Of a DNA stretch of 64,000 nt, positions 37,338 through 52,024 are shown one piece after another. The notes beneath the pieces were generated by a model. That model worked only from the letters and a program-made list of their open reading frames with translations. It did no database searches and had not been told where the DNA came from. Where the stretch lies: NCBI RefSeq assembly GCF_000143415.4, contig NW_003314323.1, forward strand, positions 624,499 to 688,498. The letters run 5' to 3'. The position numbers were made by a program, and so were the translations under genes. Numbering within the stretch: the stretch's first letter is position 1; each line of letters begins with the position of its first letter. This DNA is from Selaginella moellendorffii. Its lineage: Eukaryota > Plantae > Lycopodiophyta.

Positions 37338-39388
37338 ATGGAGGATGGCGATGGCGATGGCGCCAAGTCTCTCGGCGCTCTCGTCGTGGCGCCGGACGCG
37401 CCATCGCCAGATTTTCTCCTCTTCGACAGCAGTGGAGAAATCCGGCTCCAGGGCGAGCGCAAGCGGCGTAGGAGGCGGCTAGGTTTCGTGAAATCCATCG
37501 CCAGGTTCGTGTCCAGGCAGCTCAGCAACGCGAATCGCTATGTCGATCCGGTCTTGCTTGTTCCGAGCGATCGAGGAGGCTGCCGGCTCCATTACAGCGA
37601 GATTTTCCACCGGAAATGCCTCTCTTGCAATGCTGGCCCAGGTTTGGAGTTTAATGGAGCGGCGATCTCAGTTCTTAGCCGGTGTAGCGCGGCTACGTCT
37701 TGGAATTCCGGGAATGTGAGACTTAAAAGCCAGGAGCTGGAAAAAGTGAGCAAGCTTGGAGATATTGATCGCAGCAGCAGTGATGGTGTCAGTGTTTCTA
37801 CGACGATGGTTAATTCTAGCTTGCTGGACGAACTGGTCGACGACGATCAAAGTAGATTTTCCCAGCTTCAAGAGATGTCAGTTTCTTCTTCCCAGGTCCA
37901 AAGCATGCCATCTTCGACGCAAGATTTGGGCGTCAAGCTCGCCGAGAACTTAAGCTTGAAGGCTGTGCCGAACGAACCAAAGTCTACAAACTTGAAGCTT
38001 GGTGAAGAGCTGGTGGCAGAAGAGAAGCGGAAGAGTGCAAGTTGCGGCAAAAATCACGCGGTTGCTGGTGCTCTTGCTGGAGTTTTTGTGAGCTTGTGCT
38101 TGCATCCTCTCGACACCGTCAAGACCGTGATCCAGTCCAAGAACACCGGGAAGCAAGCGATCTTGCCGATTGTTGCGTCCATTGTATCTACGAGGGGTAC
38201 GTACTTTTGCAATGCTCTTGTTTTTCTTGGAGGTTAGTGATAATTCTGTTGTTTAGTTTTGCAGGTGTCTCTGGTTTGTACAGAGGTTTAGGAAGCAATC
38301 TCGCGTCGTCGGCCCCTATATCGGCAATCTACACGTTTACGTATGAAACCATGAAAGCGGCGTTGCTACCACGCCTTCCAGAGGTAACGCACACAATCAC
38401 TGGAAACCGTAACCATTTATAACTTCGATTGTTTTTCCTATGTAGGAATACCACTCGCTCGCTCATTGCGCTGCCGGGGGCTGTGCCAGCATCGCTACGT
38501 CTCTTGTTTACACACCAAGTGAGCGTGTGAAGCAGCAAATGCAAATTGGAGCAGTGTATCGAAATAGCTGGTGGGCTTTCAGTATTCTCTGCTGCTCACG
38601 TATTAGAAACCATGGATGGCAGGCTGGCTTTTGTTGGCATTCTACAAAGAGGAGGCCTTCCGGCGCTGTATGCAGGATGGGAAGCCGTCCTCTGCCGCAA
38701 TGTTCCACAATCGGTTATCAAAGTGAGCTGCATTGCCTTGGGCTTTTGAGTTTTCCTCAACGCTTTGAAACAGTTCTTCACGTACGAAGCTTTGAAGCAC
38801 CGTGTTCTTCGTGATTCTCCTCCGGACACGCATCTCACCAATTTGCAGACGGTAAGGACAAGATGTTCACATCACTTCGAGCGTGATAACAGATTGTCTG
38901 GGTATGGAAAAATCTGTAGCTCGCGTGTGGAGGACTTGCAGGATCGACGGCAGCCTTATTTACCACACCTTTTGACGTGGTGAAGACAAGATTGCAGACA
39001 CAGGTATCTTTGACTGCACAGTTTCTTTCCTTCACGTTAACTTGGGCGATTTCTTTCTTCCAGACAATCGGATCGCAACATCAATACAGCAGCGTCTTAA
39101 ATGCCTTGCAGATGATAACCAGAGACGAAGGCATTCGAAGTTTATACAGGTAAAGAGCTCGATCAAAAACTAGTAGCGACTTTGCGCGATTGATCCTTCT
39201 TTGCTTCCAGGGGTCTCATCCCGAGACTGGCGATCTACGTCTCGCAGGGAGCGCTGTTCTTCGCGTCCTACGAGTTTTTCAAGAGGGCTCTGGCAATGGA
39301 AGCGCGAAGCTATCAAACTCCAAAAAGCGTTTCTTCCGACGGCTCGGAGGCTAGCCGCCGGAGACGAGCTCTTTTGAGCGCCGCGTGA
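37338..39388 (+). CDS. Mitochondrial carrier family protein with long N-terminal extension (AT4G11440-like, SAM-carrier-related)
   Basis: Three carrier signatures HPLDTVKT, TPSERVKQQMQ, TPFDVVKTRLQ; GLYRGLGSNLASSAPISAIYTFTYE. Confidence 0.9.
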
Positions 39389-39589
39389 TTAATTAGTTAG
39401 TTTAACGCTAACGGAAATGATTTATAGTTAACCAGCCTGCCACGTCGTTCCCGCTGGTCCTGGAAATTTGAATCCTCGTTTTTTGTATACGTTGAGCTCA
39501 AAGAAGGGGGAAGAGAAGAGGAAAGAGAAGAGGAAAGAGAAGAGGGAAGATTTTTAGGGCGTGTCGCGGCGGTGAGCTCCAGAGGCCCG

Positions 39590-40670
39590 ATGGCGGAGGA
39601 GGGAGGAGCGATCGTGACAAAGGCGGCGGCGGCGGCTCTTGCTCCTCCTCCTCCTCCGTGCGCTGAGGGCAAGGAGAATGTGGCTCCGGACGGCGAGCAA
39701 GGGATCATTGGAAGCCCTCTTCCCGATGGATTTCCTCGCAGGCCGCTCCAGGATATCACTCAGGTGCTCGAATCGGACAATGTAAGCGTAAGGCTAGAGT
39801 GTAGATCTTTAGGTAGGAAGACACTGTTTCGTCGACTGTTTTTGAGTGGATGTAGAGTATTTTCGATGGAACAGTGTGTTTGCCTGTGTAGATGGTCTCT
39901 TTCTTTTTTCTTCTTGGTTTCTTCTTTGTAGGTGGCCTCTTTCGTTTTCTTCTTTCTTTTGGTTTTAAAAGTGGGCTGCCTTGACTCTACAGAGAACCGA
40001 GAGCATAACGATCACTTGCACTGGACAGTCCAAAACAACTCGGGCCAAGAAATGCATTGCAACAAAAACTACGACGACATGCAAGGTAGTGTTGGCTTTT
40101 GCTGTGCAAATCACTGCTGATCGATGTGCTCTCGTCACAGGGCAAAGAAAACAGACGTGGCAAGTCGCGAACGGGCCTCGAGCAAGGTATGATCACGATA
40201 GACAGACATGTCTCATTCCACAGCACAGTGCTAAATCGATTTCCCTCTTGCTTTTTTAATCCTTCCAGTGGTACTTGTCACGAGCTCCAAGATGCAGCAG
40301 GCCCAAGGCGATTCTCTAACAGTGGTGAGATCTCCACAATGCCTTTGAAGCTTAGCGCTTGGCAATATCTAACTAGTGTTGGATTTCGAAACAGGAAACC
40401 TTGGACGACATAAAACAAGCTTACACGCCGTCGCAATCCACAGTTCACTCAGCGCAAACTACAAGTCGCTCCAGACACAGCGATGGCGAAAAACAAGAGG
40501 ATGCCGCAGCAGAGGGTACGCTCCAACCTGGTGCCGCGGCTCTAGGCGACGAAGGGGAAGATTCCGGTGTGGTTTTGCGGAAAAAGAAGAGGAAATCTCA
40601 GGCACAAGCACAGGCAACGGCAGCCGCGAAGCCAAAACACAACAAGAGCAGCATTCTCAAGTTCAGGTGA
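39590..40670 (+). CDS. UVI4/OSD1(GIG1)-like putative APC/C regulator, five exons
   Basis: GKENVAP, SPLPDGFPRRPLQDITQVL, a second GKEN in exon 3, C-terminal SILKFR*; exon phases consistent. Confidence 0.65.
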
Positions 40671-41686
40671 CCAACTTGGTCCCCTTGTCTCAACTTCATC
40701 TGATAAAAAAAAAGTGGCTAAAGTGCTTAGGACTAAATCTTAGTTGAGCTTGAAACTATTAATTGTACATCTCTTGAATTAGCATATTTGATTTAGATTT
40801 CTAGAGGTCTTGCATACAATATCCACCAACGCTATGGAACATTAGTAGAAAAAATAACTCTTATAGAAATGCGATTGTAATGCCCACTAACAGAAAAACT
40901 ATTATGCTAATAAGATGAGTATGTAATCCACTATATTAATATTGTGCAGAAGAACACTCTCATGGCTCTAGGATTCCCAAGGAGACACCTTCCGGCTTCT
41001 ATGATTGTGGGTGGGGCTCTCTCTCTCTCTTCGTCACCTTTTGGAATGGGTGGGGTCCTGGCCAAACATTCCATCTACAAAAGAAAAAGTAGCATATATT
41101 GTTAAATTAAAAGAGAAAATGTTCTTTGTCAAGCACAATACTGATGGAATGAATCAAATAATATTTCTGTGCTCATGCTTTGCATTTGTGTTATCTAATG
41201 AAGTGAAATATGTTTTTTTGACAATTTATTTTATATTTTTACAGGGCTGCATGTACCGCAAGCACAATAGAAGTGTTGCTAAATTGTCAAAACAATTTTT
41301 AAACTCACGATCTATATTAGAAATATACACAACAATCTTTTTCTAATGTAAAAAACAATTAAAAGGATGCCGTGTCTCTTTTGCAGCTTTTTCTTCCTCT
41401 CCTTATCTATGTGATCTTTTAAGCCACTAGCCAACAATTGATAGATCTACTGGTGCGTCGCATTTTTCCACCACTTTTTCTTTGTTACAGATCATAAGAG
41501 CCTTGATCTTCTTGATAGCAATTGAAGGCATCCACAAACTGATCTCTTCAGGATTATACATCGATACAAGTGATATGGACTTGTTCCAGTAGAAATCTAC
41601 GTAGCCAGATCAAAAAAGAGAGAAACAAACAAGTAGAAATTGACAAGAAAAGGCGATAAAAAGGTAAAAAAGGCAAACAACTCTTT

Positions 41687-42100
41687 CTACCTTGTGTGAC
41701 CAGTCCACAGGTACCTTCCCTTCTTCCAGCACACGACGATCCTCTTGTGGCACAGAAGCTGATCGATGGGAACGTAAACCGGGGAAGTTTCCAAGTTGAT
41801 CATGTTCAAGTAGTGGTGATACCGGTGGTGGTCGTGGTGGCGATCGGGGATCTCCTCCTCCTCCTCCTCGCCATAGACCATGACGAGCGCGGCGTTGTGG
41901 CGGCTCGCATCGTCCAGCTCCAGCCGGATCACTGCCGTCGACCACGGCTCGATTTGGTACCGCATCTCTTGCCTCCAAATGCCCCTTCCTTCCTTGAGCA
42001 GCAGCGTTCGATCGGTTTGATTCTCGATCATGGTTAGAACGTAGCCGGAATTGGGACTGGAGGAGCTCCCGCTGCCACTGTTGCTACTGCTGCTTGCCAT
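41687..42100 (-). CDS. Small intronless protein resembling a non-seed-plant uncharacterised family (T-I-EN-T-R-L-LKEG..W-G-R)
   Basis: 137-aa GC-rich ORF within AT-rich surroundings; poly-Glu and His-rich insert. Confidence 0.6.
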   Translation of the reverse strand: MASSSSNSGSGSSSSPNSGYVLTMIENQTDRTLLLKEGRGIWRQEMRYQIEPWSTAVIRLELDDASRHNAALVMVYGEEEEEEIPDRHHDHHRYHHYLNMINLETSPVYVPIDQLLCHKRIVVCWKKGRYLWTGHTR

Positions 42101-44269
42101 TTCTCTATGCTCTCCGTGAATTGATATCTATGTATCGCGAGCACGCTAGGTACTATAAGGTAGAGTGTAGTATCTTAAGAACTTATCTACAACTCATGGA
42201 AATTCACACACATACACTGAGGAGATTCCTGAATTCTTGGATCATCAAGCTCAAGCTGTGAGTTGCTAGTGAGAAATGTGTGCGTTTTCCAGAATAACTC
42301 TGGATCTTCAATGTATGTTCCTCTTTAAATTGTTTCAAGCAAAGCAGAGAGGAAGAGAACCAACAAAAGGGACAAAAATAAGAGGAAAATGGAGAAGCAA
42401 GGGAATGTTGTCACAATGAGGTAATGCCCTTGTGTACATATTGTGTGTATTTATATGTGATAATAGTTACCACCACGTAAATCGCTTTTTTACCATGCAG
42501 GCGGCAGCCGCATGGTAGAAACAAAAAATAAAACCAGACCTTGTATTTCTAGTGGACAGAGTGAAAACACATCCCCCGGGGTAAAAAATCTCTCTCAATT
42601 CCAACAGTTTATATTATTCAAGCCAAGCTATTAATTATTATTAATTATTTTAGATTAGTTTTGATCTGTTGTGCTCTTTCTCTCCACATATGATGGAAGG
42701 GAGAGTCTTTATCTTGGCCAGCATGGCATCTAGCTGTTTGTCCCAACCAGTGCCAATTTATGCCAGGCTTGTGGGGAGAAAAATGGGAGAACCAAGTTGG
42801 TTCTCCCTTGATGCAGGGAGTCCTTGTAAGCTCAAACCAAATATCTTGACATCTTCTCACAAACAAAGGACACACCATCACAGAAAAGCTAAAGGACCAA
42901 ATGCATGAATTTCTACAAAGTCCAAACTGTGGGTGTTTGGGTGGTACAAGCGAGCGCCCAGCGTGTATATTATTGTTTCTAGCCGGAATGGCGTGCAACA
43001 TAAGAGACGAAGGCAACCAATTCAAAGAGTTTGGTGGCCAGGACACAAAAGACTCGCCCCCGTACTTTTTTTCGACGTATATAAATACGTGAGGCTCCCA
43101 GTTGATGAGATAGACCCCCTGGATGCTGCCAATCATGATGCACGACGTAAGATTCCCCGTAGTTATCAAATATCAATGGGATTAGCGCCAAAGTATATAA
43201 ACTTTTTTACGAGTAAGCACGGCACACTCTAATCTCTCATAAATCTCTTTGGAGTTGTTATTCTATTTTATCTGATTAGTTCTGCTATTTTTCTTCCCAG
43301 CATTCATTGACTTGTTGCTCCCGGAAGCCAGTGGAGTGAATGAAAACAGTGTGATTCATCGAGCAAAGTTTACACGCAAACAGGACAGTTTGTTGACCTT
43401 GAAATTTCAAGGAGGGAAGGGACAAGTTGAATTCATAAATAGATAAGTGATTTTGGATAAACAGAGAAAAAAGGAGGAGAGAAAAGAAAGCACCACTACA
43501 AAAAATAATGGGTCCACAGCGGCATATGTTCTGGGTTTTAAAGTTTTACCTTTGAATTTTCAAGTCAAGAGATGGCAGAGCTCAGAGGTTCTTTTTGTTT
43601 TGCTTTCGTTGAGCTAAAAAGAATCGTTTGCTGCTGCTGCTGCTGGCGCTTCTCATTCACTCGTTTGGCATTATTAAACTGAATACGAATCTAAGCCCAG
43701 CCAGCAGAGAGTTTATAATTCATCTTCATCACAGGGTGTTAGATCCAATTTCAAGGAGATTTTACCATTGTAATCTTGTGGAAATATCAAATTCCTTTTC
43801 CACTTTCATAGTGAGTCGCTAGAGAGAGGCGATGGTACGAACTCTACATTTGCAGGACGCAGGATTTGAGGTGGTGGAAGCTTACTTGATGGATCGAAGC
43901 TGTTGAAGCATTCCTCACGGCACCTGAGAGAAAAAAGAGAGAAACACGTTTAGTTTCATCATGCGCATACATACATACATTCACGTCTTTGTAGCCGCCC
44001 CGAGACTAGCGTTACGTCACATGGAGGTTGCTTTGTCTGGCTGCGACTGGCAAAGATTCAAGCGTTACCTCCGTATTCGCGATCCCCAAGAAGAACTTGC
44101 TCATAGTCTTCCCTCGAGGAACGATCCATCGATCCATCGACTTGCTCGACGGAGAGCGAGAGCGCAGCGCACAGAACAGCAAGAACCTGAGGTGAGGCAA
44201 CGGTAGTAGTAATTGCTCTCTACGAAAAGGAGCAAAAAGCGTAAAAGAGTCGCGTACCTTCGTACTAGC

Positions 44270-45676
44270 ATGGCGAACAAGCCAGTTCCATTGCTACCAG
44301 CAGCTGTGATGACGACGCTCCTGGCAGTAGTCGGAATAGCTTGGACGCTTCTCAGCAGCCAACGCTTGCCATCCGCTTACAACTATTTCAAGTCCTTGTC
44401 TCCAGCTGTGCCTGCTGCTACCTTTGCAACCTTTCCTGCAGGCCTGTGCAATTGCTCCGTAGACTTTGGCGCCATCGGCACGCTTTCGAAGCCTCACGTC
44501 GAGTGCCAGTGCTCTGGAGCCAACTCCACCGCCCGGGACCCCATCGAGACAAAGGTTGTCCATGTTGAAGTGGAGAAGCCGTGTCCAAAACCACCCACCG
44601 TTGTCAAGTACGAGCCGTGGTGGGCCGAAGGCAAGACTTGGCACTATCCGGCAAAGTTCCCCAGGTGCTCCATGGATGCCTGCTTCAACTTCTCGCGCTG
44701 CTCCAACATGGACAACTTGATGGTGTTCACGTACGAGGACCACAACGCCCCTGTCCGCTACTTCACCAAGCTCAACGAGACCAGGTGGCATACCAAGGAT
44801 CCCGAGAAGGCCTGCATCTTCATGGTCTTTCTGGACACTTCAAGTCCATGGCAGAAGCAGCCCCGGGACCTCCCACACTGGAATAACGGCCTCAACCATG
44901 CGCTCGTGACTTTTGCTGACAAGTGGAGCCAGAGGGCGGTTGCCGAGGAGTCCATTGGCCTGGCGTCGTTGATCGTTTCGGAAGCTCACGAGACCATCTT
45001 CCGACCTGGCTTTGACATCAGCATCCCGCTTCCGCCTTTCTACCACTTCCATGAGTTCCAGAACCTGAAGCCGTTTGAGAGGAAGTACTTCCTCACCTTC
45101 AAAGGACTAAGGTATATCGGCAGAGGAGAGGGCCTCCTTCGCAGCTTTGACAGCTTCCGAAACCTTCACAACGGTGCTGATATCGTCGTTGTAACTTCGT
45201 GCAAACACTTTGTCAACGATCTCAAGCGGAAGGAGAACACTTCCCTGGGAGTCCACTGCGACGAGGATGAGGACCTGTACTCTCAGTACTCTTCCTTCTC
45301 GGATCTCATGAATACGACCTTTGGCCTCGTTCCTGCTGGTGTCCAACCAAACTCCTACAGATTTGGAGAGGTCCTCAGTGCCGGTGCAATACCAATCTTG
45401 ATCGTCGACAACTACGTAAAACCGTTCAGTAATCTGGTCACCTGGTATCAGTGCCTGCTGCAATTCCCTTCCACCGAAATCCACCTCATTGTTGCAGCTC
45501 TGAGAGCCATGTCCACGGCTCACGTTGAGAAACGACAGCAAGCGTGCTCGAAGATATATAGTAGGCACTTCCAGAGCGACTTGACCCTTCTAGAGAGTAC
45601 CGTCGCTGCTTTAGAAGAAAGATTTCTGGGTGCATTTCCAGCTTTCTCGTCCCATTTGTCAGACCTGAACCTGTAA
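44270..45676 (+). CDS. Exostosin-family GT47 glycosyltransferase, type II membrane protein, EXT1-like
   Basis: Intronless; N-terminal TM; CSMDACFNFSRC, TKDPEKACIF, WNNGLNH, FRPGFDISIPL, RKYFLTFKGLRY, TFGLVPAG..SYRFGEVLSAGAIP. Confidence 0.93.
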   Translation: MANKPVPLLPAAVMTTLLAVVGIAWTLLSSQRLPSAYNYFKSLSPAVPAATFATFPAGLCNCSVDFGAIGTLSKPHVECQCSGANSTARDPIETKVVHVEVEKPCPKPPTVVKYEPWWAEGKTWHYPAKFPRCSMDACFNFSRCSNMDNLMVFTYEDHNAPVRYFTKLNETRWHTKDPEKACIFMVFLDTSSPWQKQPRDLPHWNNGLNHALVTFADKWSQRAVAEESIGLASLIVSEAHETIFRPGFDISIPLPPFYHFHEFQNLKPFERKYFLTFKGLRYIGRGEGLLRSFDSFRNLHNGADIVVVTSCKHFVNDLKRKENTSLGVHCDEDEDLYSQYSSFSDLMNTTFGLVPAGVQPNSYRFGEVLSAGAIPILIVDNYVKPFSNLVTWYQCLLQFPSTEIHLIVAALRAMSTAHVEKRQQACSKIYSRHFQSDLTLLESTVAALEERFLGAFPAFSSHLSDLNL

Positions 45677-46119
45677 GTTCAAAGAAAATTTTGAAGCAAA
45701 AGAAAATAATAATCATGCACTGCTTACACATATGAAGACCGGATGCATAGCCTGGAAGAAAATAGCCATAAGTTTCGCAGACAAAAAACTAAAAATTCAA
45801 ATAAAGAAGAAGAAGAAAATCACTGCTCACCGTTTGTCTTCGATCATCATACATACTATAGCTAGACATGGACGAGAACAGAACAAAAGCAGTATACATA
45901 TATTTGCATGATACGACAACAACGCGGTTTGCAGCTTCAAAGTCTGTTTCATAGGCTTCAAAGCTGCTCCCTACATTTTGCATGCTGCTCCACCAAAGAA
46001 TTATGCTACAACAGACCTTGGTGTCGTATTTGCGCACTTACGGTTAACCCCGCTTTGACGAATGAAGTTCCTGCGTCAAAGCTGCAATGAATATAACTGA
46101 AACAAGTGTAGCATCTACC

Positions 46120-49100
46120 TTAATCTCCATCGCCAGGCACCATTCCAAAAGTCAAGGGATCAGATGTTTCCGCCTGTTAAGATAGAGATGATTTGAGTAA
46201 CATGTAATAAGAGTAAGGCTCACCTCCAGAAGCTGATCCTCCAGCCCATGTTGTCTGGACGAACCAAAAGAATTTGTGATCCAGTCCCTACGGATGATTC
46301 GGAGCTTGCCTTCCTGTTATTTGTGCATTAGGCCGAGTCATCCATCTAAAGGAAAGTTGTCAAACCTTTGTGCCGTAAACAAGCCCTCCGCCAACTCGAG
46401 GATGAAAGCACGCTACATTAACTTCATCTTCAGCACTTGGGAGAACTCGCACTAGTTTCAAATCTGATATTCTATAAATCTGAGAAACAAAAGGAAAATT
46501 TCAATGGAGTCCAAAAAATAGAGAGCGCAAACCTCGAGTATTGTATATACAGGAATCGTAGTTGTTCCATCCAACACGATGCTCCTCAAGAGTGAACCGT
46601 GACGTCGACCATAGGCCAAAAGTATATGACCAGATGTGGGAGAGAACTGCAATAAAAATTCATATTATGAAAATAAAAAAGAGAGGAACAAAAAGAAAGA
46701 AGAGCGTTTAATGGGGAAGAAAAGAACCTGTATTGACGTTAAGCAGTGCGCTGCACGGACAGCCTTAGAAGCGAGTACTTCTCCAAACCTGTAAAGAGCA
46801 ATTAGGAAACAAACTCCTTCAAGATTCACTTACGTGGCCTCTTCCAAAGAGTAGATCCGCAGCTCGTATATAACTTGCTGAGTAGAAATTGGATGTTGTG
46901 TAGGAGACTGCACTGAAAATCCAGGGCCACCAGGACCATTTGTTCGACCCTGCGCAGGCTCGGCTTCCGGTGGTAACACACAAGCAACACAAGCGGCGAG
47001 AAAACGGCCGCATGGTGAGAAATGTGTACCCATCTCACTACGTAGACAATAGAAAGGTTAGTCCACAAAAACAGAACGGGAAAAAAGCGAAAACACAGAA
47101 AGTGAAAGAAGAAAAAACAAAAAACGAACCTGCATAATACCGCATGAGGAATGGTCAATTTACACGTCTCCGGATCAAGAAGCGCACTGGGTTGCTTGAT
47201 GTCGTGCGGCCAAAGCTTCAACTTTACTGTACAAGGAAGCTCTGCTGCTGTTGCTGCGGTGACGGCAGCTTCAGCAACACCGAAACCAGTAAACTGACCT
47301 CCCTGAGCACGATGTTGCGTCCGTCCTTCAGCTGCATTCCGGCCACCTCTCCGCGTACCAGATGCTTCGGGCGGTTGAGGTTGATGTTGCGGTCCACCTT
47401 CGTTTTCCGGCTGGTCATAACGTACCCAGCCTTGAAGAAACGGGTCCAGCACCACAGGATCGGTCACATGAAGAAAGCGTGGCAAGTGTGTTTGTCCGGT
47501 CATTGAATATGCCTGAATGTTTGGGAACAATCCAATCGGCCAGATTCCCGAGCCAGTGCCAACTTCCACCGCTTCTTCCTGTCTTCTAGCTACCGGAACC
47601 AATGGCACTCGCAAAGCACTAGCGCCACCAAAAGAAATGTTCTCCACCTGGCCAGTTACTGCTTCAGGAAGTACGAGAGGATCCCAGGGGCCGCCAACAA
47701 CCGTAGGACTCACCCTGCCTGTCTCCGAAACTAAACCTGGAGTTTCCACTGGATCCATGCCATCTGAAGGTGGTGGTGCCGCAGCATTCGATGGTCTGGG
47801 AGAAATATCCATTGGAGCAGTCGTGGTTAGAGACTCCCGTTGCACTTGGGCATCGCCAGTCCATATCCAGTTTTGAGGGGCAGCACCACCAGGATGCGAA
47901 TAGTGTAGTTCCGTATAAGGATACACTTGGTACTCCCTCGATGTGGCTACGGACATAGGACAGTCTGGTGAATCCAGATCATTCACCTAGAAAGAAAAAC
48001 CGTAAGACGCGTTTTAAAGAGGAGAAAGAAAGTATCACCTCCGCAGTTAGTACAAGGGGCGCTGCTAGCGGGTGAAAATGTACTGCACGAAGCGATCGCC
48101 GTGTGCGAAGAACGATATTTGGACATGCTGCATCACCTTCTTTCGTATATTGCCAAATGTAAAGCTAAATATCGAAACATTAGAATGGTATGCTAAAGAA
48201 ATTAGAAGGTAGAACCTTATGTCCGGAAGCAACTGCGAGTAAATCCCCTCGTGCGTGAAATGCTAGAGACGCAATAGGCCGGTCTGAAAGGAAAAAACCA
48301 GCTATTAGAAACAAAACTTCCATGCGAATGCTTACAAAAATCCCGAGATGCAACACATTCTGCAGTGTTAGCGTTCCAAAGACGAACTTCATAGTCCAAA
48401 CTACCGCTTGCTAGCACTTCAGGGCTGCTAGGATGAAAACGGACCTGCATGTAAGTAGGTAGAAAAGATCCATGCTATGGAAAAGAATGTCCATAACATA
48501 CCACCCACGGCGTTCTTCGGTGTCCGCTCAACACTTTAAGGCATTGGCCGCTTTGACAGCATATAATTTTCACGGTATGATCGCCACTGCAAGAGTGCTG
48601 TCAAGACAAAGAAGTCGACAAAGAGATTTACTCACTGTGTTGATGCTAAAGTCAATCCATCCGGACTGAAGGCTGCAGCAATAGTTGACCTTGGTGCCGG
48701 TACCAAAGAACAATACTTCGCAATGGAGTGCTTGAACGACTCAGCTTCCAGCCTAAGAGCAAATCTCAGGAATTCAGTAAGTTGTTTGTAGCAAAGTCAT
48801 CAACTCACCAGTTAACTAGAGCATGTTTGGCGTTTGTAGTTTCGCGAGAATGCCCATGGCATTTACTGGAAGATGCAGCTGTATCCCTCCACAACCTTTT
48901 CGAAGGTCTTCTTACGCTTGGCGAAATCTGTCTCCAATCAAGCATACGCAAAACATTGTCCGCTCTAAGTAGAGAGAAAGAACACTGTTAGAAACAAATA
49001 AACATAAGAAATTCTTACAAGTTCTTTGACTGGCACTGTGAGCACGACGATGCCTGCGATCCAGACACTCCTGCCGCATTATTTTCAAAGCAGGAGGACA

Positions 49101-49284
49101 CCATCCCCGCCCCGTCCAAGCTACATACGTAACACTAGAGTTGCTACACTATCACAGCGCGCGCAGAATTCCCTTGCATTCTCCGGAAATCCCCGATCAC
49201 AGACCTGGAATCCATGCCTCGGAGCTCTCAAATCCGATGCCCGGTAAAATCTAAGGTTCCAGAGCCCCGGAATCTGGAAATCCA
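46120..49284 (-). CDS. WD40 protein, AMBRA1/DCAF-like (AT1G04140-like); start uncertain (49080-49284)
   Basis: PRSTIAAAFSPDG, LSGHRRTPWVVRFHP, LASGSLDYEVRLW, AAAELPCTVKLKLW, AVLCSEMGTHFSPCGRFLAACVAC, DEVNVACFHP. Confidence 0.9.
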
Positions 49285-49656
49285 TCGCAAAATCTGTGCC
49301 GGCGCCCCGGCGCGCCGCCCATACCGCGCCATACACTGATCCCTAAGCGTCACGATCTTACGCTACCACTCCCGTGCCCTAAAATCGTACTTCTGGCTAT
49401 GGCGAAAATGCATAATGCCGATCTAAGCCGCCGATTTGAATTAAATCGAACGGCCATGATTCGGTTTTGCGCCAACGGCCCCGATACCCGCGTAATTTCT
49501 TTTGTAGCTAACGCGGTTTAGGGTTTCATCGGATCTCTCTCAGGAAGATCTTGGAGAGCTTGAGCGCTAGGAAGATTTGGAGAGTTTGAGCGCTAGGAAG
49601 GAAGATCTTGAAATCTCTCCAGATGAAACGAAGAGGATATTTAGAAAAGAGGGCAA

Positions 49657-51543
49657 ATGGAAAGACGAGCGAGCTTGTGCTCACAGATTCGGTCATGCGG
49701 CACCGCAGCCGCGGTGGAGAAGATTCACCGTGACATTGGCGAATCGGTCCTCTCCGACGTCTTTGTCGCAAATCTCCTCATCAAGAAGTATGGAGAGTGC
49801 GGCAGCCTCGAGAAATCGAGGGAGATTTTTGACCAGATCCCGAGCTCCTCCAGGAGTCGAAACATACACACCTGGATCGCGCTGCTATCCGCGTACGTGC
49901 ACCGCCAGGATCTGCGAGAAACCAAACGGATCTTCGATAGAATGCCCGAGTGGAACCTGGTCGCCTGGACGATTCTACTCGTTGCCTACGCTGGCAGCGG
50001 CGATCTCCAGGAGGCCGATCGAGTGTTTAGATCGATGCAAGAGAGGGATCTCGTTGCCTGGAACGGGATCCTATCAGCATCTGCCACTGCTGGGCACTTT
50101 GCTCGTGTCCAAAACATCTTCCAAAGCATGCCAGAGAGGGATCTAGTTTCCTGGAATTGCATGCTAGCGGCATATTCCCGTGACACGAATATGCAAGATT
50201 TGGAGCGAATCTTCCGGACAATGCCTGCTTGGAACATGGTATCCTGGGCGACAATGCTGGCAGCATATTCCCAGACAGGGGACTTATTATCATGTAAATG
50301 TTTGTACGAGGCTATGCCTGAGAGAGATTCCTTTTCTTCCACAGCGATGCTAGCGCTTTTAGAGGAAAAAGGCTACCTAGATCTAGCTCAACGACTATTT
50401 GATTCCATGAAAGAGCGGAGTCTAGTAACTTGGACAGTCATGGTTGCAGCATATGCCCGGAGAGGGCATATTGATCTTACTGTAGAATTCTTCAACAAAG
50501 CCCCGGAGCTGGATCGAGTCCTGTGCACTACAATGATCGCCGCTTTTTCAGAGGCTGGATTTATCGATAGAGCAAGTGAAATCTTCCACAAGATGCTCGA
50601 GAGAGATCTATGCGCGTGGACTACCATGCTCGAAGGATTTGCCCTAAATGGGGATCTTGGAATGGCAAACTTATGCTTCCAATCCCTCCCCGCTCTAGAC
50701 GTGGTGTCGTGCAATGCCATGATCGCCGCCTACGGCACCCACGGGCTCACAGGCAAAGCCAAACATTTGTACGACTCCATGCCCGTACAGAGCGTGGCAT
50801 CCGCGACGCTCATGGTAGCGGCATATTCCCATTGCGGGAATGTGGAGGCGGCAAGATGGGTGTTTGAAGAGTGGTCAGGCGTTCGAGACCCAGGGCTCTC
50901 TAACGCGATGCTGTATGGTTACTTGAATTGCGGGTATGTGGAAGAGGGCGAGCTCCTCTTCGCTGCGATGGAGGAGGGCCATCGCGATTCGTTCTCATGG
51001 AGCACGATGATCACCGGGCTGGCCCGGAATGGGGATTTCAAGCGCGCGGCAGCGATCTTTGCTAGGGTTAGCGAGCGGGGATTGGTGCTGTCGACGGCGA
51101 TGCTGCGCGCCTATTCGGGGTATGGATCCGTGGAGGCTGCCAGGAAGATCTTTGAGGCAATGCAGGATTGCGACGTCATTCTCTGGAACTCGATGATTCT
51201 CGCCTACGCGCAGAACGGCCGATTGCCCGAGGCGATGGGGCTTTTCAGGCTCATGAATCTTGGCGGCCGGGCGCCCGACGAGAGCTCCTTTGTCACGATC
51301 ATCGCCGGATGCAGCCATTTCGGTGTGATCGACGACGGCAAGAGGTTCTTTCTCTCGCTCCAGCAAGATTTCCATCTCCAGGCATCCAAGATTCTCTACA
51401 GCGCCATGGTCGATCTCCTCCAGCGCGGAGGGTATCTAGCAGATGCCCAGGAGCTCCTTGCGAAATTGCCGCTTCTTCCGGCGCCAACGCGGCAGTGGCG
51501 TGTCGCAGGCCGCTTGTGCCACGTCTGCACTCCACGTCGGTAA
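49657..51543 (+). CDS. PLS/SS-rich PPR protein with truncated or degenerate E domain
   Basis: 628-aa intronless ORF of about 31-aa repeats (FDRMPEWNLVAWTILLVAYA); similarity is lost after AQELLAKLPLLP. Confidence 0.9.
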   Translation: MERRASLCSQIRSCGTAAAVEKIHRDIGESVLSDVFVANLLIKKYGECGSLEKSREIFDQIPSSSRSRNIHTWIALLSAYVHRQDLRETKRIFDRMPEWNLVAWTILLVAYAGSGDLQEADRVFRSMQERDLVAWNGILSASATAGHFARVQNIFQSMPERDLVSWNCMLAAYSRDTNMQDLERIFRTMPAWNMVSWATMLAAYSQTGDLLSCKCLYEAMPERDSFSSTAMLALLEEKGYLDLAQRLFDSMKERSLVTWTVMVAAYARRGHIDLTVEFFNKAPELDRVLCTTMIAAFSEAGFIDRASEIFHKMLERDLCAWTTMLEGFALNGDLGMANLCFQSLPALDVVSCNAMIAAYGTHGLTGKAKHLYDSMPVQSVASATLMVAAYSHCGNVEAARWVFEEWSGVRDPGLSNAMLYGYLNCGYVEEGELLFAAMEEGHRDSFSWSTMITGLARNGDFKRAAAIFARVSERGLVLSTAMLRAYSGYGSVEAARKIFEAMQDCDVILWNSMILAYAQNGRLPEAMGLFRLMNLGGRAPDESSFVTIIAGCSHFGVIDDGKRFFLSLQQDFHLQASKILYSAMVDLLQRGGYLADAQELLAKLPLLPAPTRQWRVAGRLCHVCTPRR

Positions 51544-52024
51544 AGCTGGCCACGTCTGCGCGAATATCTCGGAGAGAATATTCGGCCGCGTGTCCTTTGG
51601 AGCGCCAAAGGTTGCTACACAGGAAGGCCACGCGGATTTTTTTTTCGTTGGGCAGATTGATTGATGCGCTCACTTCCAAAATGATGATGGTCATTGGGCG
51701 CGGCCTCCTCCGGTGATTTCCATTTCCTCCACTCAACGCATTCCACCAGTCCAGAAGAGTTCTGGGAGGAAAAAAGGGAGCGTGTTTATAGCGGTGCATT
51801 AGGGGAAAGGTTTAGGTCAACCAGGGGTTTGCTTCTCCGCTTGAGCAGGGAGGCGTCTCTAGAAGTCGCCAAGAGAAGGTCTGTGTCTGCCTGGATTGGT
51901 TTCTTCGCGGAAAAATCCGATTTTTCTGACCGAAAGCTCTTTCCTTTTGTTTGGCAGGAAGCCCGGAGGAGGGGGAGGAGGAGTAGCATCAAAAGCAGCA
52001 GCAGTGGCAGGAGGAGGAAGCTCA

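What the first reader, a model, noticed from the sequence alone, without database searches (positions are those of the whole stretch)
44270..45676. Plant GT47 that resembles the animal heparan-sulfate polymerase EXT1
Seen versus recalled human EXT1: CSMDACFNFSRC/CRMESCFDFTLC, WNNGLNH/WNNGRNH, FRPGFDISIPL/FRPNFDVSIPL, RKYFLTFKGLRY/RKYMLVFKGKRY, LHNGADIVVVTSCKH/VHNGEDVVLLTTCKH, CDED..Y/CDRD..Y. These EXT-specific blocks are not typical of the seed-plant GT47 clades (MUR3, IRX10, ARAD, XGD). There is no GT64 domain and no intron. The donor-site PRGRRLGSFRF becomes PAGVQPNSYRF, losing the R340/R341 equivalents. Inference: an ancient retained or horizontally acquired EXT-type enzyme with changed donor specificity that may make an uncharacterised glycan in non-seed plants.
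Basis: partly seen in the sequence, partly recalled or inferred. Interest (0 to 1): 0.75.

Follow-up and report, generated by a model that had tools for sequence, protein, structure and literature searches.

The report
Selaginella member of known GT47-G clade
This is a real, intact spikemoss (Selaginella) gene for a Golgi sugar-transferase whose closest characterised relative is the animal heparan-sulfate enzyme EXT1, but this group of plant enzymes was already described and named GT47-G in 2022, and what it makes is still unknown.

Summary
Window 44270-45676 (+) is one uninterrupted 468-codon ORF. It encodes a type II membrane protein with a single GT47 domain.

The window is Selaginella moellendorffii. 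NCBI already names the allelic protein "exostosin-1c".

Wilson et al. 2022 (PMC9178029) defined clade GT47-G as opisthokont exostosins plus Ginkgo and Physcomitrium proteins lacking GT64. The two Marchantia members were shown to be in the Golgi in 2025 (PMC12398305).

My trees place the window protein inside a monophyletic streptophyte G group with Ginkgo, Marchantia, Riccia and Diphasiastrum, far from angiosperm clade C. That fits vertical inheritance with loss in angiosperms, not horizontal transfer. It is also not confined to non-seed plants.

UDP-binding residues are conserved. The EXT1 D162/D164 loop and R338/R341 are missing from all streptophyte members. R340 is V/I in this orthogroup but R in most paralogues.

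Donor, acceptor and product remain untested. RNA contigs show only minus-strand splice junctions around the ORF, so sense expression is not shown here.

The parts
44270..45676 (+). Complete intronless CDS (468 aa plus stop) of the Selaginella moellendorffii GT47-G glycosyltransferase
   Evidence: ORF list. 98% identical (9 aa differences) to NCBI 'exostosin-1c [Selaginella moellendorffii]', also 468 aa. Same single-exon gene call on GL377585.1. pN/pS between the haplotypes is 0.26.
44294..44359 (+). N-terminal transmembrane helix (residues 9-30), the type II signal anchor
   Evidence: The AlphaFold2 model has a helix at 9-30 with pLDDT about 86. The sequence is hydrophobic. The Marchantia clade G proteins are Golgi-localised (PMC12398305).
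44360..44653 (+). Luminal stem (residues 31-128) with a small Cys-rich beta-hairpin region at about residues 52-81
   Evidence: Model secondary structure shows strands at 52-57, 60-65 and 76-81, pLDDT about 77-80. This part has no match in EXT1.
44654..45625 (+). GT47 catalytic domain, GT-B fold (residues 129-452)
   Evidence: phmmer against EXT1, E 2e-36 over residues 129-452. Foldseek best hit is 7sch_A (EXT1), E 2.2e-24, then EXT2 and EXTL3. The domain is mostly at pLDDT 90-98.
44828..44863 (+). Shortened loop FLDTSSPWQKQP (residues 187-198), in place of the EXT1 loop that carries D162 and D164
   Evidence: Alignments. Only the EXT1 D159 equivalent (D189) is kept. The D162/D164 positions are S192/W194, and the loop is about 10 residues shorter in all streptophyte members. 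The EXT1 D162N/D164N mutant loses GlcA transfer (PMC9675754).
45320..45370 (+). Donor-binding loop and start of the C-alpha-4 helix, FGLVPAGVQPNSYRFGE (residues 351-367)
   Evidence: F351, G357, R364 (EXT1 R346) and E367 (EXT1 E349) are invariant across 58 diverse GT47-G sequences. A356, V358 and Q359 replace EXT1 R338, R340 and R341.

Best explanation
The ORF is an intact, selectively constrained, intronless gene of Selaginella moellendorffii. It encodes a single-domain, type II membrane (Golgi-type) GT-B glycosyltransferase of the published GT47-G clade, the clade that also holds the GT47 domains of animal exostosins.

It was inherited vertically from the streptophyte ancestor. The group is kept in charophytes, bryophytes, lycophytes, ferns and Ginkgo, and no angiosperm member was found.

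Inferred mechanism: it binds a UDP-sugar in the conserved pocket between the two Rossmann-like halves, using the R291, Y337, F343, R364 and E367 equivalents of EXT1 R280, Y319, Y324, R346 and E349. It then transfers one sugar with inversion to a glycan acceptor in the Golgi.

It cannot be a heparan-type co-polymerase on its own, because it has no GT64 domain. Its sugar and acceptor recognition probably differ from EXT1, because the D162/D164 loop and the R338/R340/R341 cluster are not conserved. Donor, acceptor and product are unknown.
For: Shown here:
- Pfam GT47 only.
- EXT1 is the best solved relative by sequence and by fold, using a confident model (mean pLDDT 86).
- Orthologues at 45-59% identity occur in Diphasiastrum, Ginkgo, Marchantia, Riccia, Physcomitrium, Ceratodon, ferns and Closterium. 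None of the 105 hits is from an angiosperm.
- The careful ML trees give a monophyletic streptophyte group (100/98). The window protein sits with Ginkgo, Marchantia GT47.14, Riccia and Diphasiastrum (93/93; 81/82).
- Angiosperm clade C is separated from this group by a 100/100 branch of about 4.4 changes per site.
- G357, R364 and E367 are invariant. R291 is conserved in 86 of 88 streptophyte relatives, and position 343 is aromatic (F or Y) in 86 of 88.
- pN/pS between the two haplotypes is 0.26.
- The Marchantia orthologue is also a single exon.

From the literature:
- Clade GT47-G was defined with Ginkgo and Physcomitrium members that lack GT64 (PMC9178029).
- MpGT47G1 and MpGT47G2 co-localise with a Golgi marker and lack angiosperm orthologues (PMC12398305).
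- EXT1 binds UDP through R280, R346, E349, Y319 and Y324 (PMC9675754).
Against: - No activity has been measured for any plant GT47-G protein.
- The two aspartates whose double mutation abolishes EXT1 GlcA transfer have no equivalent here. EXT2, which also lacks them, is catalytically inactive, so activity cannot be taken for granted.
- Only clade C of the six seed-plant clades could be fetched for my tree. Exclusion from clades A, B, D, E and F rests on the published tree and on hit ranking.
- Sense-strand transcription was not shown. Every splice junction seen around the ORF has minus-strand polarity.
- The absence of angiosperm members rests, a word-index search with limited sensitivity, and on the two papers.
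Confidence: 0.82

Rival explanations
1. It is a true beta-glucuronosyltransferase like the EXT1 GT47 domain. It would use UDP-GlcA and add GlcA to a GlcN(Ac)-terminated acceptor made by a separate plant GT64 enzyme.
For: EXT1 is the closest characterised enzyme. All UDP-contacting residues are conserved. Wilson et al. suggest that the plant G proteins 'could possess a related activity'.
Against: The basic cluster R338/R340/R341 is A/V/Q here. [quoted passage not shown] The D162/D164 loop is absent. Identity to EXT1 is only about 30%.
Confidence: 0.15
2. It is a catalytically dead pseudo-glycosyltransferase. It would act as a scaffold or partner for an active paralogue, as the GT47 domains of EXT2 and EXTL3 do in animals.
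For: It lacks equivalents of EXT1 D162/D164, as EXT2 does (N161/N163). It lacks R340. Several plants carry both V/I-type and R-type paralogues.
Against: The UDP-binding residues R364, E367, G357, R291 and the aromatic residue at position 343 are invariant or nearly so across the clade. This is unlike EXTL3, whose pocket is occluded. Purifying selection is seen. Only one Selaginella protein cluster (the window's own allele) appeared among the hits, so an obligate partner paralogue may not exist in this species.
Confidence: 0.1
3. The gene was acquired horizontally from an animal, protist or alga.
For: It is closer to opisthokont EXT proteins than to the seed-plant clade tested. Single-domain relatives exist in haptophytes, diatoms, brown algae and choanoflagellates.
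Against: The streptophyte sequences are monophyletic (100/98) and include Closterium. Several paralogous groups each span major land-plant lineages. The clade is not nested within any other group. The gene is present in both haplotypes in an ordinary gene neighbourhood.
Confidence: 0.02
4. It is a divergent member of a characterised seed-plant GT47 clade (A-F: MUR3, ARAD, XGD1, IRX10/IRX7, ExAD types).
For: It has the same Pfam family.
Against: phmmer gives 29-38 bits against clade C and 131-163 bits against EXT-type proteins. A 100/100 long branch separates clade C. The only canonical seed-plant-type sequence I recognised among the 150 best of 1563 library hits was a three-domain clade C fusion near the bottom of the list, at E 4e-19. 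The published tree separates G from A-F.
Confidence: 0.01

Closest known systems
Plant GT47 clade G (GT47-G; Ginkgo and Physcomitrium members of Wilson et al. 2022; Marchantia MpGT47G1/Mp3g24900 and MpGT47G2/Mp5g17760)
   Same: Single GT47 domain, no GT64, type II topology and about 440-510 aa. The window protein is 50-57% identical to Marchantia GT47.14 and Ginkgo Gb_02632 and groups with them. The Marchantia gene is also intronless. No angiosperm orthologue is known.
   Different: Nothing of substance: it is the Selaginella orthologue. Its orthogroup carries V/I at the EXT1 R340 position, whereas most paralogues in the clade keep R.
Human EXT1, N-terminal GT47 domain (beta-1,4-glucuronosyltransferase of the heparan sulfate co-polymerase; PDB 7SCH, 7ZAY)
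   Same: GT-B fold (Foldseek E 2e-24). About 30% identity over about 340 residues. Shared Cys pattern and shared motif blocks. The UDP-binding R280, R346, E349, Y319 and Y324 equivalents are kept.
   Different: No C-terminal GT64 domain, so no co-polymerase. The D162/D164 loop is shortened and not acidic. R338, R340 and R341 become A, V and Q. The N-terminal stem is different. No EXT2-like partner is known, and the donor and acceptor are unknown.
Angiosperm GT47 clade C (XGD1 / At5g03795 / At3g07620 type)
   Same: Same CAZy/Pfam family. Shares the C-terminal motif F-x-L-x-P-x-G ... R-x-x-E.
   Different: Only 29-38 bits, with about 31% identity over about 110 C-terminal residues. Separated by a 100/100 branch of about 4.4 changes per site. 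Clade C lacks the EXT-type N-terminal blocks (WNxGxNH, the CxMxxCFxF Cys motif).

Membership tests
CAZy/Pfam GT47 (Exostosin_GT47, PF03016) | Match to the family profile above the curated threshold | tested here: met
   92.2 bits against a cut-off of 33.4, E 4.6e-26.
CAZy/Pfam GT47 (Exostosin_GT47, PF03016) | [quoted passage not shown] | tested here: met
   The model matches the EXT1, EXT2 and EXTL3 GT47 domains. E367 is invariant in 58 sequences. The feature is as defined in PMC9178029.
GT47-G clade (Wilson et al. 2022) | Groups with opisthokont exostosin GT47 domains and with the Ginkgo and Physcomitrium proteins, apart from seed-plant clades A-F | tested here: inconclusive
   Met for what could be tested. 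The window protein groups with Ginkgo, Physcomitrium and Marchantia proteins and with EXT-type sequences, against clade C (100/100). Clades A, B, D, E and F could not be fetched. For those the evidence is hit ranking and the published tree.
GT47-G clade (Wilson et al. 2022) | Plant members have a single domain, without GT64 | tested here: met
   Pfam finds only GT47. The next gene downstream is a minus-strand WD40 gene.
Heparan sulfate co-polymerase (EXT1/EXT2 type) | Bi-domain architecture: GT47 plus a C-terminal GT64 (GlcNAc transferase) | tested here: not met
   No PF09258 match. An animal-type comparator, P0096, scores 318 bits for it.
Heparan sulfate co-polymerase (EXT1/EXT2 type) | EXT1 GlcA-transferase residues D162/D164 and R340 | tested here: not met
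   The aligned positions are S192/W194 and V358.
Heparan sulfate co-polymerase (EXT1/EXT2 type) | UDP-binding residues R280, R346, E349, Y319 and Y324 | tested here: met
   The equivalents are R291, R364, E367, Y337 and F343. The R280 equivalence depends on where a 1-2 residue gap is placed.
Heparan sulfate co-polymerase (EXT1/EXT2 type) | UDP-GlcA-dependent beta-1,4-GlcA transfer to GlcNAc, and hetero-dimerisation | not testable with these tools
   This needs an enzyme assay and interaction data.

The most novel reading that the evidence does not exclude
The land-plant orthogroup that carries V/I in place of EXT1 R340 (Selaginella, Diphasiastrum, Ginkgo, liverworts, some mosses) has switched to a non-uronic UDP-sugar. 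With separate plant GT64 enzymes, it would then build a so-far undescribed glycan that angiosperms have lost, for example by extending a GlcN(Ac)-terminated acceptor such as a glycosyl-inositol-phosphoceramide head group. That would amount to a 'split' relative of the animal heparan machinery. The acceptor idea comes from my general knowledge of plant GT64 enzymes and was not tested.
Probability: 0.1. Interest if true: 0.65.

Novelty: already known. Interest (0 to 1): 0.25.

Why it matters
The existence of exostosin-like GT47 enzymes in non-flowering plants bears on two questions: the origin of the GT47 family, and how the animal heparan-sulfate polymerase was assembled from separate GT47 and GT64 parts. 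That point was made in 2022.

What remains open is the biochemical function of the plant clade, meaning its donor, acceptor and product, and why angiosperms lost it. This Selaginella gene is one more intact, constrained member that could be used for such assays.

The modest additions here are:
- a residue map showing which EXT1 catalytic and donor residues the plant clade keeps and which it lacks;
- the finding that the R340 position switches between R and V/I among paralogues;
- evidence for relatives in haptophytes, diatoms, brown algae and holozoan protists, which supports an ancient eukaryotic origin.

Tried and rejected
1. Fetching all seed-plant GT47 clades for a full tree. No tool gives Arabidopsis sequences by name. 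The 150 best library hits held one sequence with the canonical seed-plant motif (P0241, an angiosperm three-domain fusion). A word search seeded with it returned only clade C in the 120 rows shown. Clades A, B, D, E and F were therefore not tested directly.

2. The role of EXT1 R340 in binding the GlcA carboxylate. The paper describing the UDP-GlcA complex (PMC10160006) is not held. Leisico et al. saw density for UDP only. I therefore make no claim about what R340 contacts.

3. Checking which Ginkgo and Physcomitrium identifiers were in the published clade G, and whether Selaginella is in the Marchantia paper's tree. The supplements did not hold them.

4. Sense expression. All four runs are kept as contigs, which cannot show strand or level. 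Only minus-polarity junctions were seen, so sense expression is left open.

5. Horizontal transfer: rejected on tree topology.

6. V/I at the R340 position as a clean sub-clade marker: rejected, because the tree needs at least 5 changes.

7. The search of earlier findings: nothing relevant by place, and no finding holds the words GT47, exostosin or EXT1.

Full report
**What is there.** Between 44270 and 45676 on the + strand lies a single ORF of 468 codons. Its product has one Pfam domain, Exostosin_GT47 (E 4.6e-26, 92 bits against a cut-off of 33), and no GT64 domain.

Against all PDB chain sequences the best match is human EXT1 (E 2e-36), aligned over query residues 129-452. EXT2 and EXTL3 follow at about 1e-12.

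**Organism and gene model.** The protein is 98% identical (9 substitutions, same length) to NCBI 'exostosin-1c [Selaginella moellendorffii]'. That protein is encoded on GL377585.1 of GCA_000143415.2 as a single 1407-nt exon. The window is 97.5% identical to that scaffold over 13.4 kb, so it is the other haplotype or another assembly of the same locus.

Between the two alleles there are 9 non-synonymous and 10 synonymous differences, giving pN/pS 0.26, which indicates purifying selection. An AlphaFold2 model built from 58 aligned sequences has mean pLDDT 86. It shows:
- an N-terminal helix at residues 9-30, the type II anchor;
- a stem with a small beta region;
- a GT-B catalytic domain, mostly at pLDDT 90-98.

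Foldseek against the PDB ranks the EXT1 chains first (E 2e-24), then EXT2 and EXTL3. Unrelated GT-B enzymes follow only at E about 1e-5.

**It is already known as a kind.** Wilson et al. 2022 (PMC9178029) built a GT47 tree of plants, animals and a choanoflagellate. [quoted passage not shown] These plant proteins lack GT64, and the authors named the clade GT47-G. They note that earlier surveys, including the Selaginella glycosyltransferase survey (PMC3342304), omitted such sequences.

The Marchantia wall paper (PMC12398305) included the Selaginella proteome in its orthogroup analysis. It showed that the two Marchantia clade G proteins co-localise with a Golgi marker, and that they lack orthologues in the angiosperm models used. 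No paper in the library gives a biochemical function.

**Relatives and phylogeny.** The word-index search returned 105 hits:
- lycophyte (Diphasiastrum, 53-59% identity), Ginkgo (57%), liverworts (Marchantia GT47.14 at 50%, Riccia, Calypogeia), mosses (Physcomitrium, Ceratodon, Sphagnum) and ferns (Adiantum, Ceratopteris);
- the charophyte Closterium (about 42%);
- more distantly, brown algae and animal EXT-type proteins;
- none from an angiosperm.

The exhaustive phmmer search found 1563 proteins at E up to 0.001. After the streptophyte clusters, the next best hits are a mix. They include bi-domain animal-type exostosins, for example zebra finch EXTL1. They also include single-domain proteins of a haptophyte (Diacronema), a diatom (Rhizosolenia), choanoflagellates (Diaphanoeca, Craspedida) and Syssomonas. 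The only canonical seed-plant-type sequence I recognised among the best 150 was a three-domain angiosperm fusion model at E 4e-19.

In direct comparison, the window protein scores 131-163 bits against animal-type EXT proteins across the whole domain. It scores 29-38 bits against angiosperm clade C (At5g03795, At3g07620, XGD1 type), mostly in the last ~110 residues.

A careful ML tree of 68 sequences gives a monophyletic streptophyte group (100/98). It is distinct from the holozoan EXT group (100/99) and from a group holding the brown algal sequences and four unnamed metagenomic ones. Inside the streptophyte group, the window protein sits in a 93/93 group with Ginkgo, Marchantia GT47.14, Riccia, Diphasiastrum and two fern proteins. 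With six clade C proteins as outgroup, the split between clade C and everything else is 100/100 and about 4.4 changes per site long, and the streptophyte group stays monophyletic (100/98).

This fits ancient vertical inheritance with several old duplications and loss in angiosperms. It argues against horizontal acquisition, and it shows the group is not limited to non-seed plants. Clades A, B, D, E and F could not be fetched, so for them I rely on the published tree and on hit ranking.

**Active site.** The EXT1-EXT2 structure paper reports that UDP is held by R280, R346, E349, Y319 and Y324. It also reports that the D162N/D164N, R280A and R346A mutants lose GlcA transfer, and that EXT2, which has N161/N163, is inactive (PMC9675754). 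[quoted passage not shown]

Mapping these residues onto the window protein and its relatives gives the following.

| EXT1 residue | Window residue | Conservation |
|---|---|---|
| G339 | G357 | invariant in 58 diverse sequences |
| R346 | R364 | invariant in 58 diverse sequences |
| E349 | E367 | invariant in 58 diverse sequences |
| R280 | R291 | R in 86 of 88 streptophyte relatives; equivalence depends on a 1-2 residue gap |
| Y319 | Y337 | Y, F or H in relatives |
| Y324 | F343 | F or Y in relatives |
| D231 | D249 | nearly invariant |
| D162, D164 | S192, W194 | loop about 10 residues shorter in all streptophyte members; only the D159 equivalent (D189) is kept |
| R338 | A356 | not R in any streptophyte or brown algal relative examined |
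| R341 | Q359 | not R in any streptophyte or brown algal relative examined |
| R340 | V358 | R in 64 of 88 streptophyte relatives, I in 13, V in 10; R in brown algae |

On the tree the R versus V/I state needs at least 5 changes. It is V/I in 8 of the 10 members of the window's own group.

The nucleotide pocket therefore looks intact, which argues for a working enzyme. The parts of EXT1 most likely to deal with the sugar and the acceptor differ across the whole plant group, and at R340 in this orthogroup in particular. I could not verify what R340 contacts in the UDP-GlcA complex, because the paper is not held.

**Expression.** Four runs from four studies, kept as contigs, cover the locus. They contain spliced joints, so they are RNA-derived. 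No joint lies inside the CDS, which confirms that the CDS has no intron.

However, all joints near the gene have CT..AC ends on the + strand, which I checked against the sequence. They are therefore minus-strand GT..AG introns:
- about 43922-44066 and 44185-44255, just upstream of the ATG;
- about 45669-45725 and 45751-45829, just after the stop;
- seven further introns of the downstream minus-strand WD40 gene.

By offset from the other haplotype's gene call, the WD40 CDS ends near 46134. At least one spliced minus-strand RNA therefore overlaps the GT47 ORF in antisense. Part of it appears to be a spliced 3' extension of the WD40 transcript. Contigs cannot show whether a sense mRNA is also present, and sequence conservation is the evidence that the ORF is functional.

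**Verdict.** This is a real gene, correctly recognised as EXT1-like. It belongs to a clade that was published and named in 2022 and followed up in 2025, and the protein itself already carries an exostosin name in NCBI. The open question is the function of plant GT47-G. It remains open, and sequence analysis alone does not make it more testable. Interest is low to moderate.

Noticed in passing
window 43629-46172, minus strand: In RNA-derived contigs of four studies, every splice junction flanking the GT47 ORF has minus-strand GT..AG polarity (introns at about 43922-44066, 44185-44255, 45669-45725 and 45751-45829). A spliced antisense RNA therefore overlaps the ORF. One inferred antisense exon (44256-45668) is almost co-extensive with the sense CDS (44270-45676).
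   Followed up: partly
window 45830-47988 and beyond, minus strand: The downstream convergent gene encodes a 758-aa WD40-repeat protein on the other haplotype. Its CDS ends near window 46134 (estimated by offset from that gene call), yet some contigs splice on through two or three further introns into the 3' end of the GT47 ORF. These would be 3'-UTR introns, which would make such isoforms candidates for nonsense-mediated decay.
   Followed up: partly
window 45673-45678, plus strand: A consensus 5' splice-site hexamer, GTAAGT, overlaps the TAA stop codon of the GT47 ORF (45674-45676). No plus-strand splicing from it was seen in the contigs.
   Followed up: partly
window 38270-51654 versus L001 (GL377585.1:1902965-1916371): One blastn alignment of 97.5% identity with 135 gapped positions over 13.4 kb. 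The window is the alternative haplotype (or another assembly) of the published Selaginella moellendorffii scaffold.
   Followed up: yes
window 44420-44512 (residues 51-81): The luminal stem holds a Cys-rich stretch (CNC...CQC) that the model folds into three short beta strands at pLDDT about 77-80. It has no counterpart in EXT1, and its function is unknown.
   Followed up: no
proteins P0113/P0248, P0170, P0187, P0224, P0272, P0133 (one search hits): Single-domain EXT-like GT47 proteins occur in a haptophyte (Diacronema), a diatom (Rhizosolenia), choanoflagellates and Syssomonas, as well as in brown algae. The EXT-type lineage is therefore widespread in eukaryotes, not an animal-plus-plant oddity.
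   Followed up: partly
protein P0241 (Dipteronia dyeriana, 807 aa): This angiosperm gene model carries three tandem GT47 clade C domains. It is probably a fusion of tandem duplicates in the annotation, and many similar long models appear.
   Followed up: no
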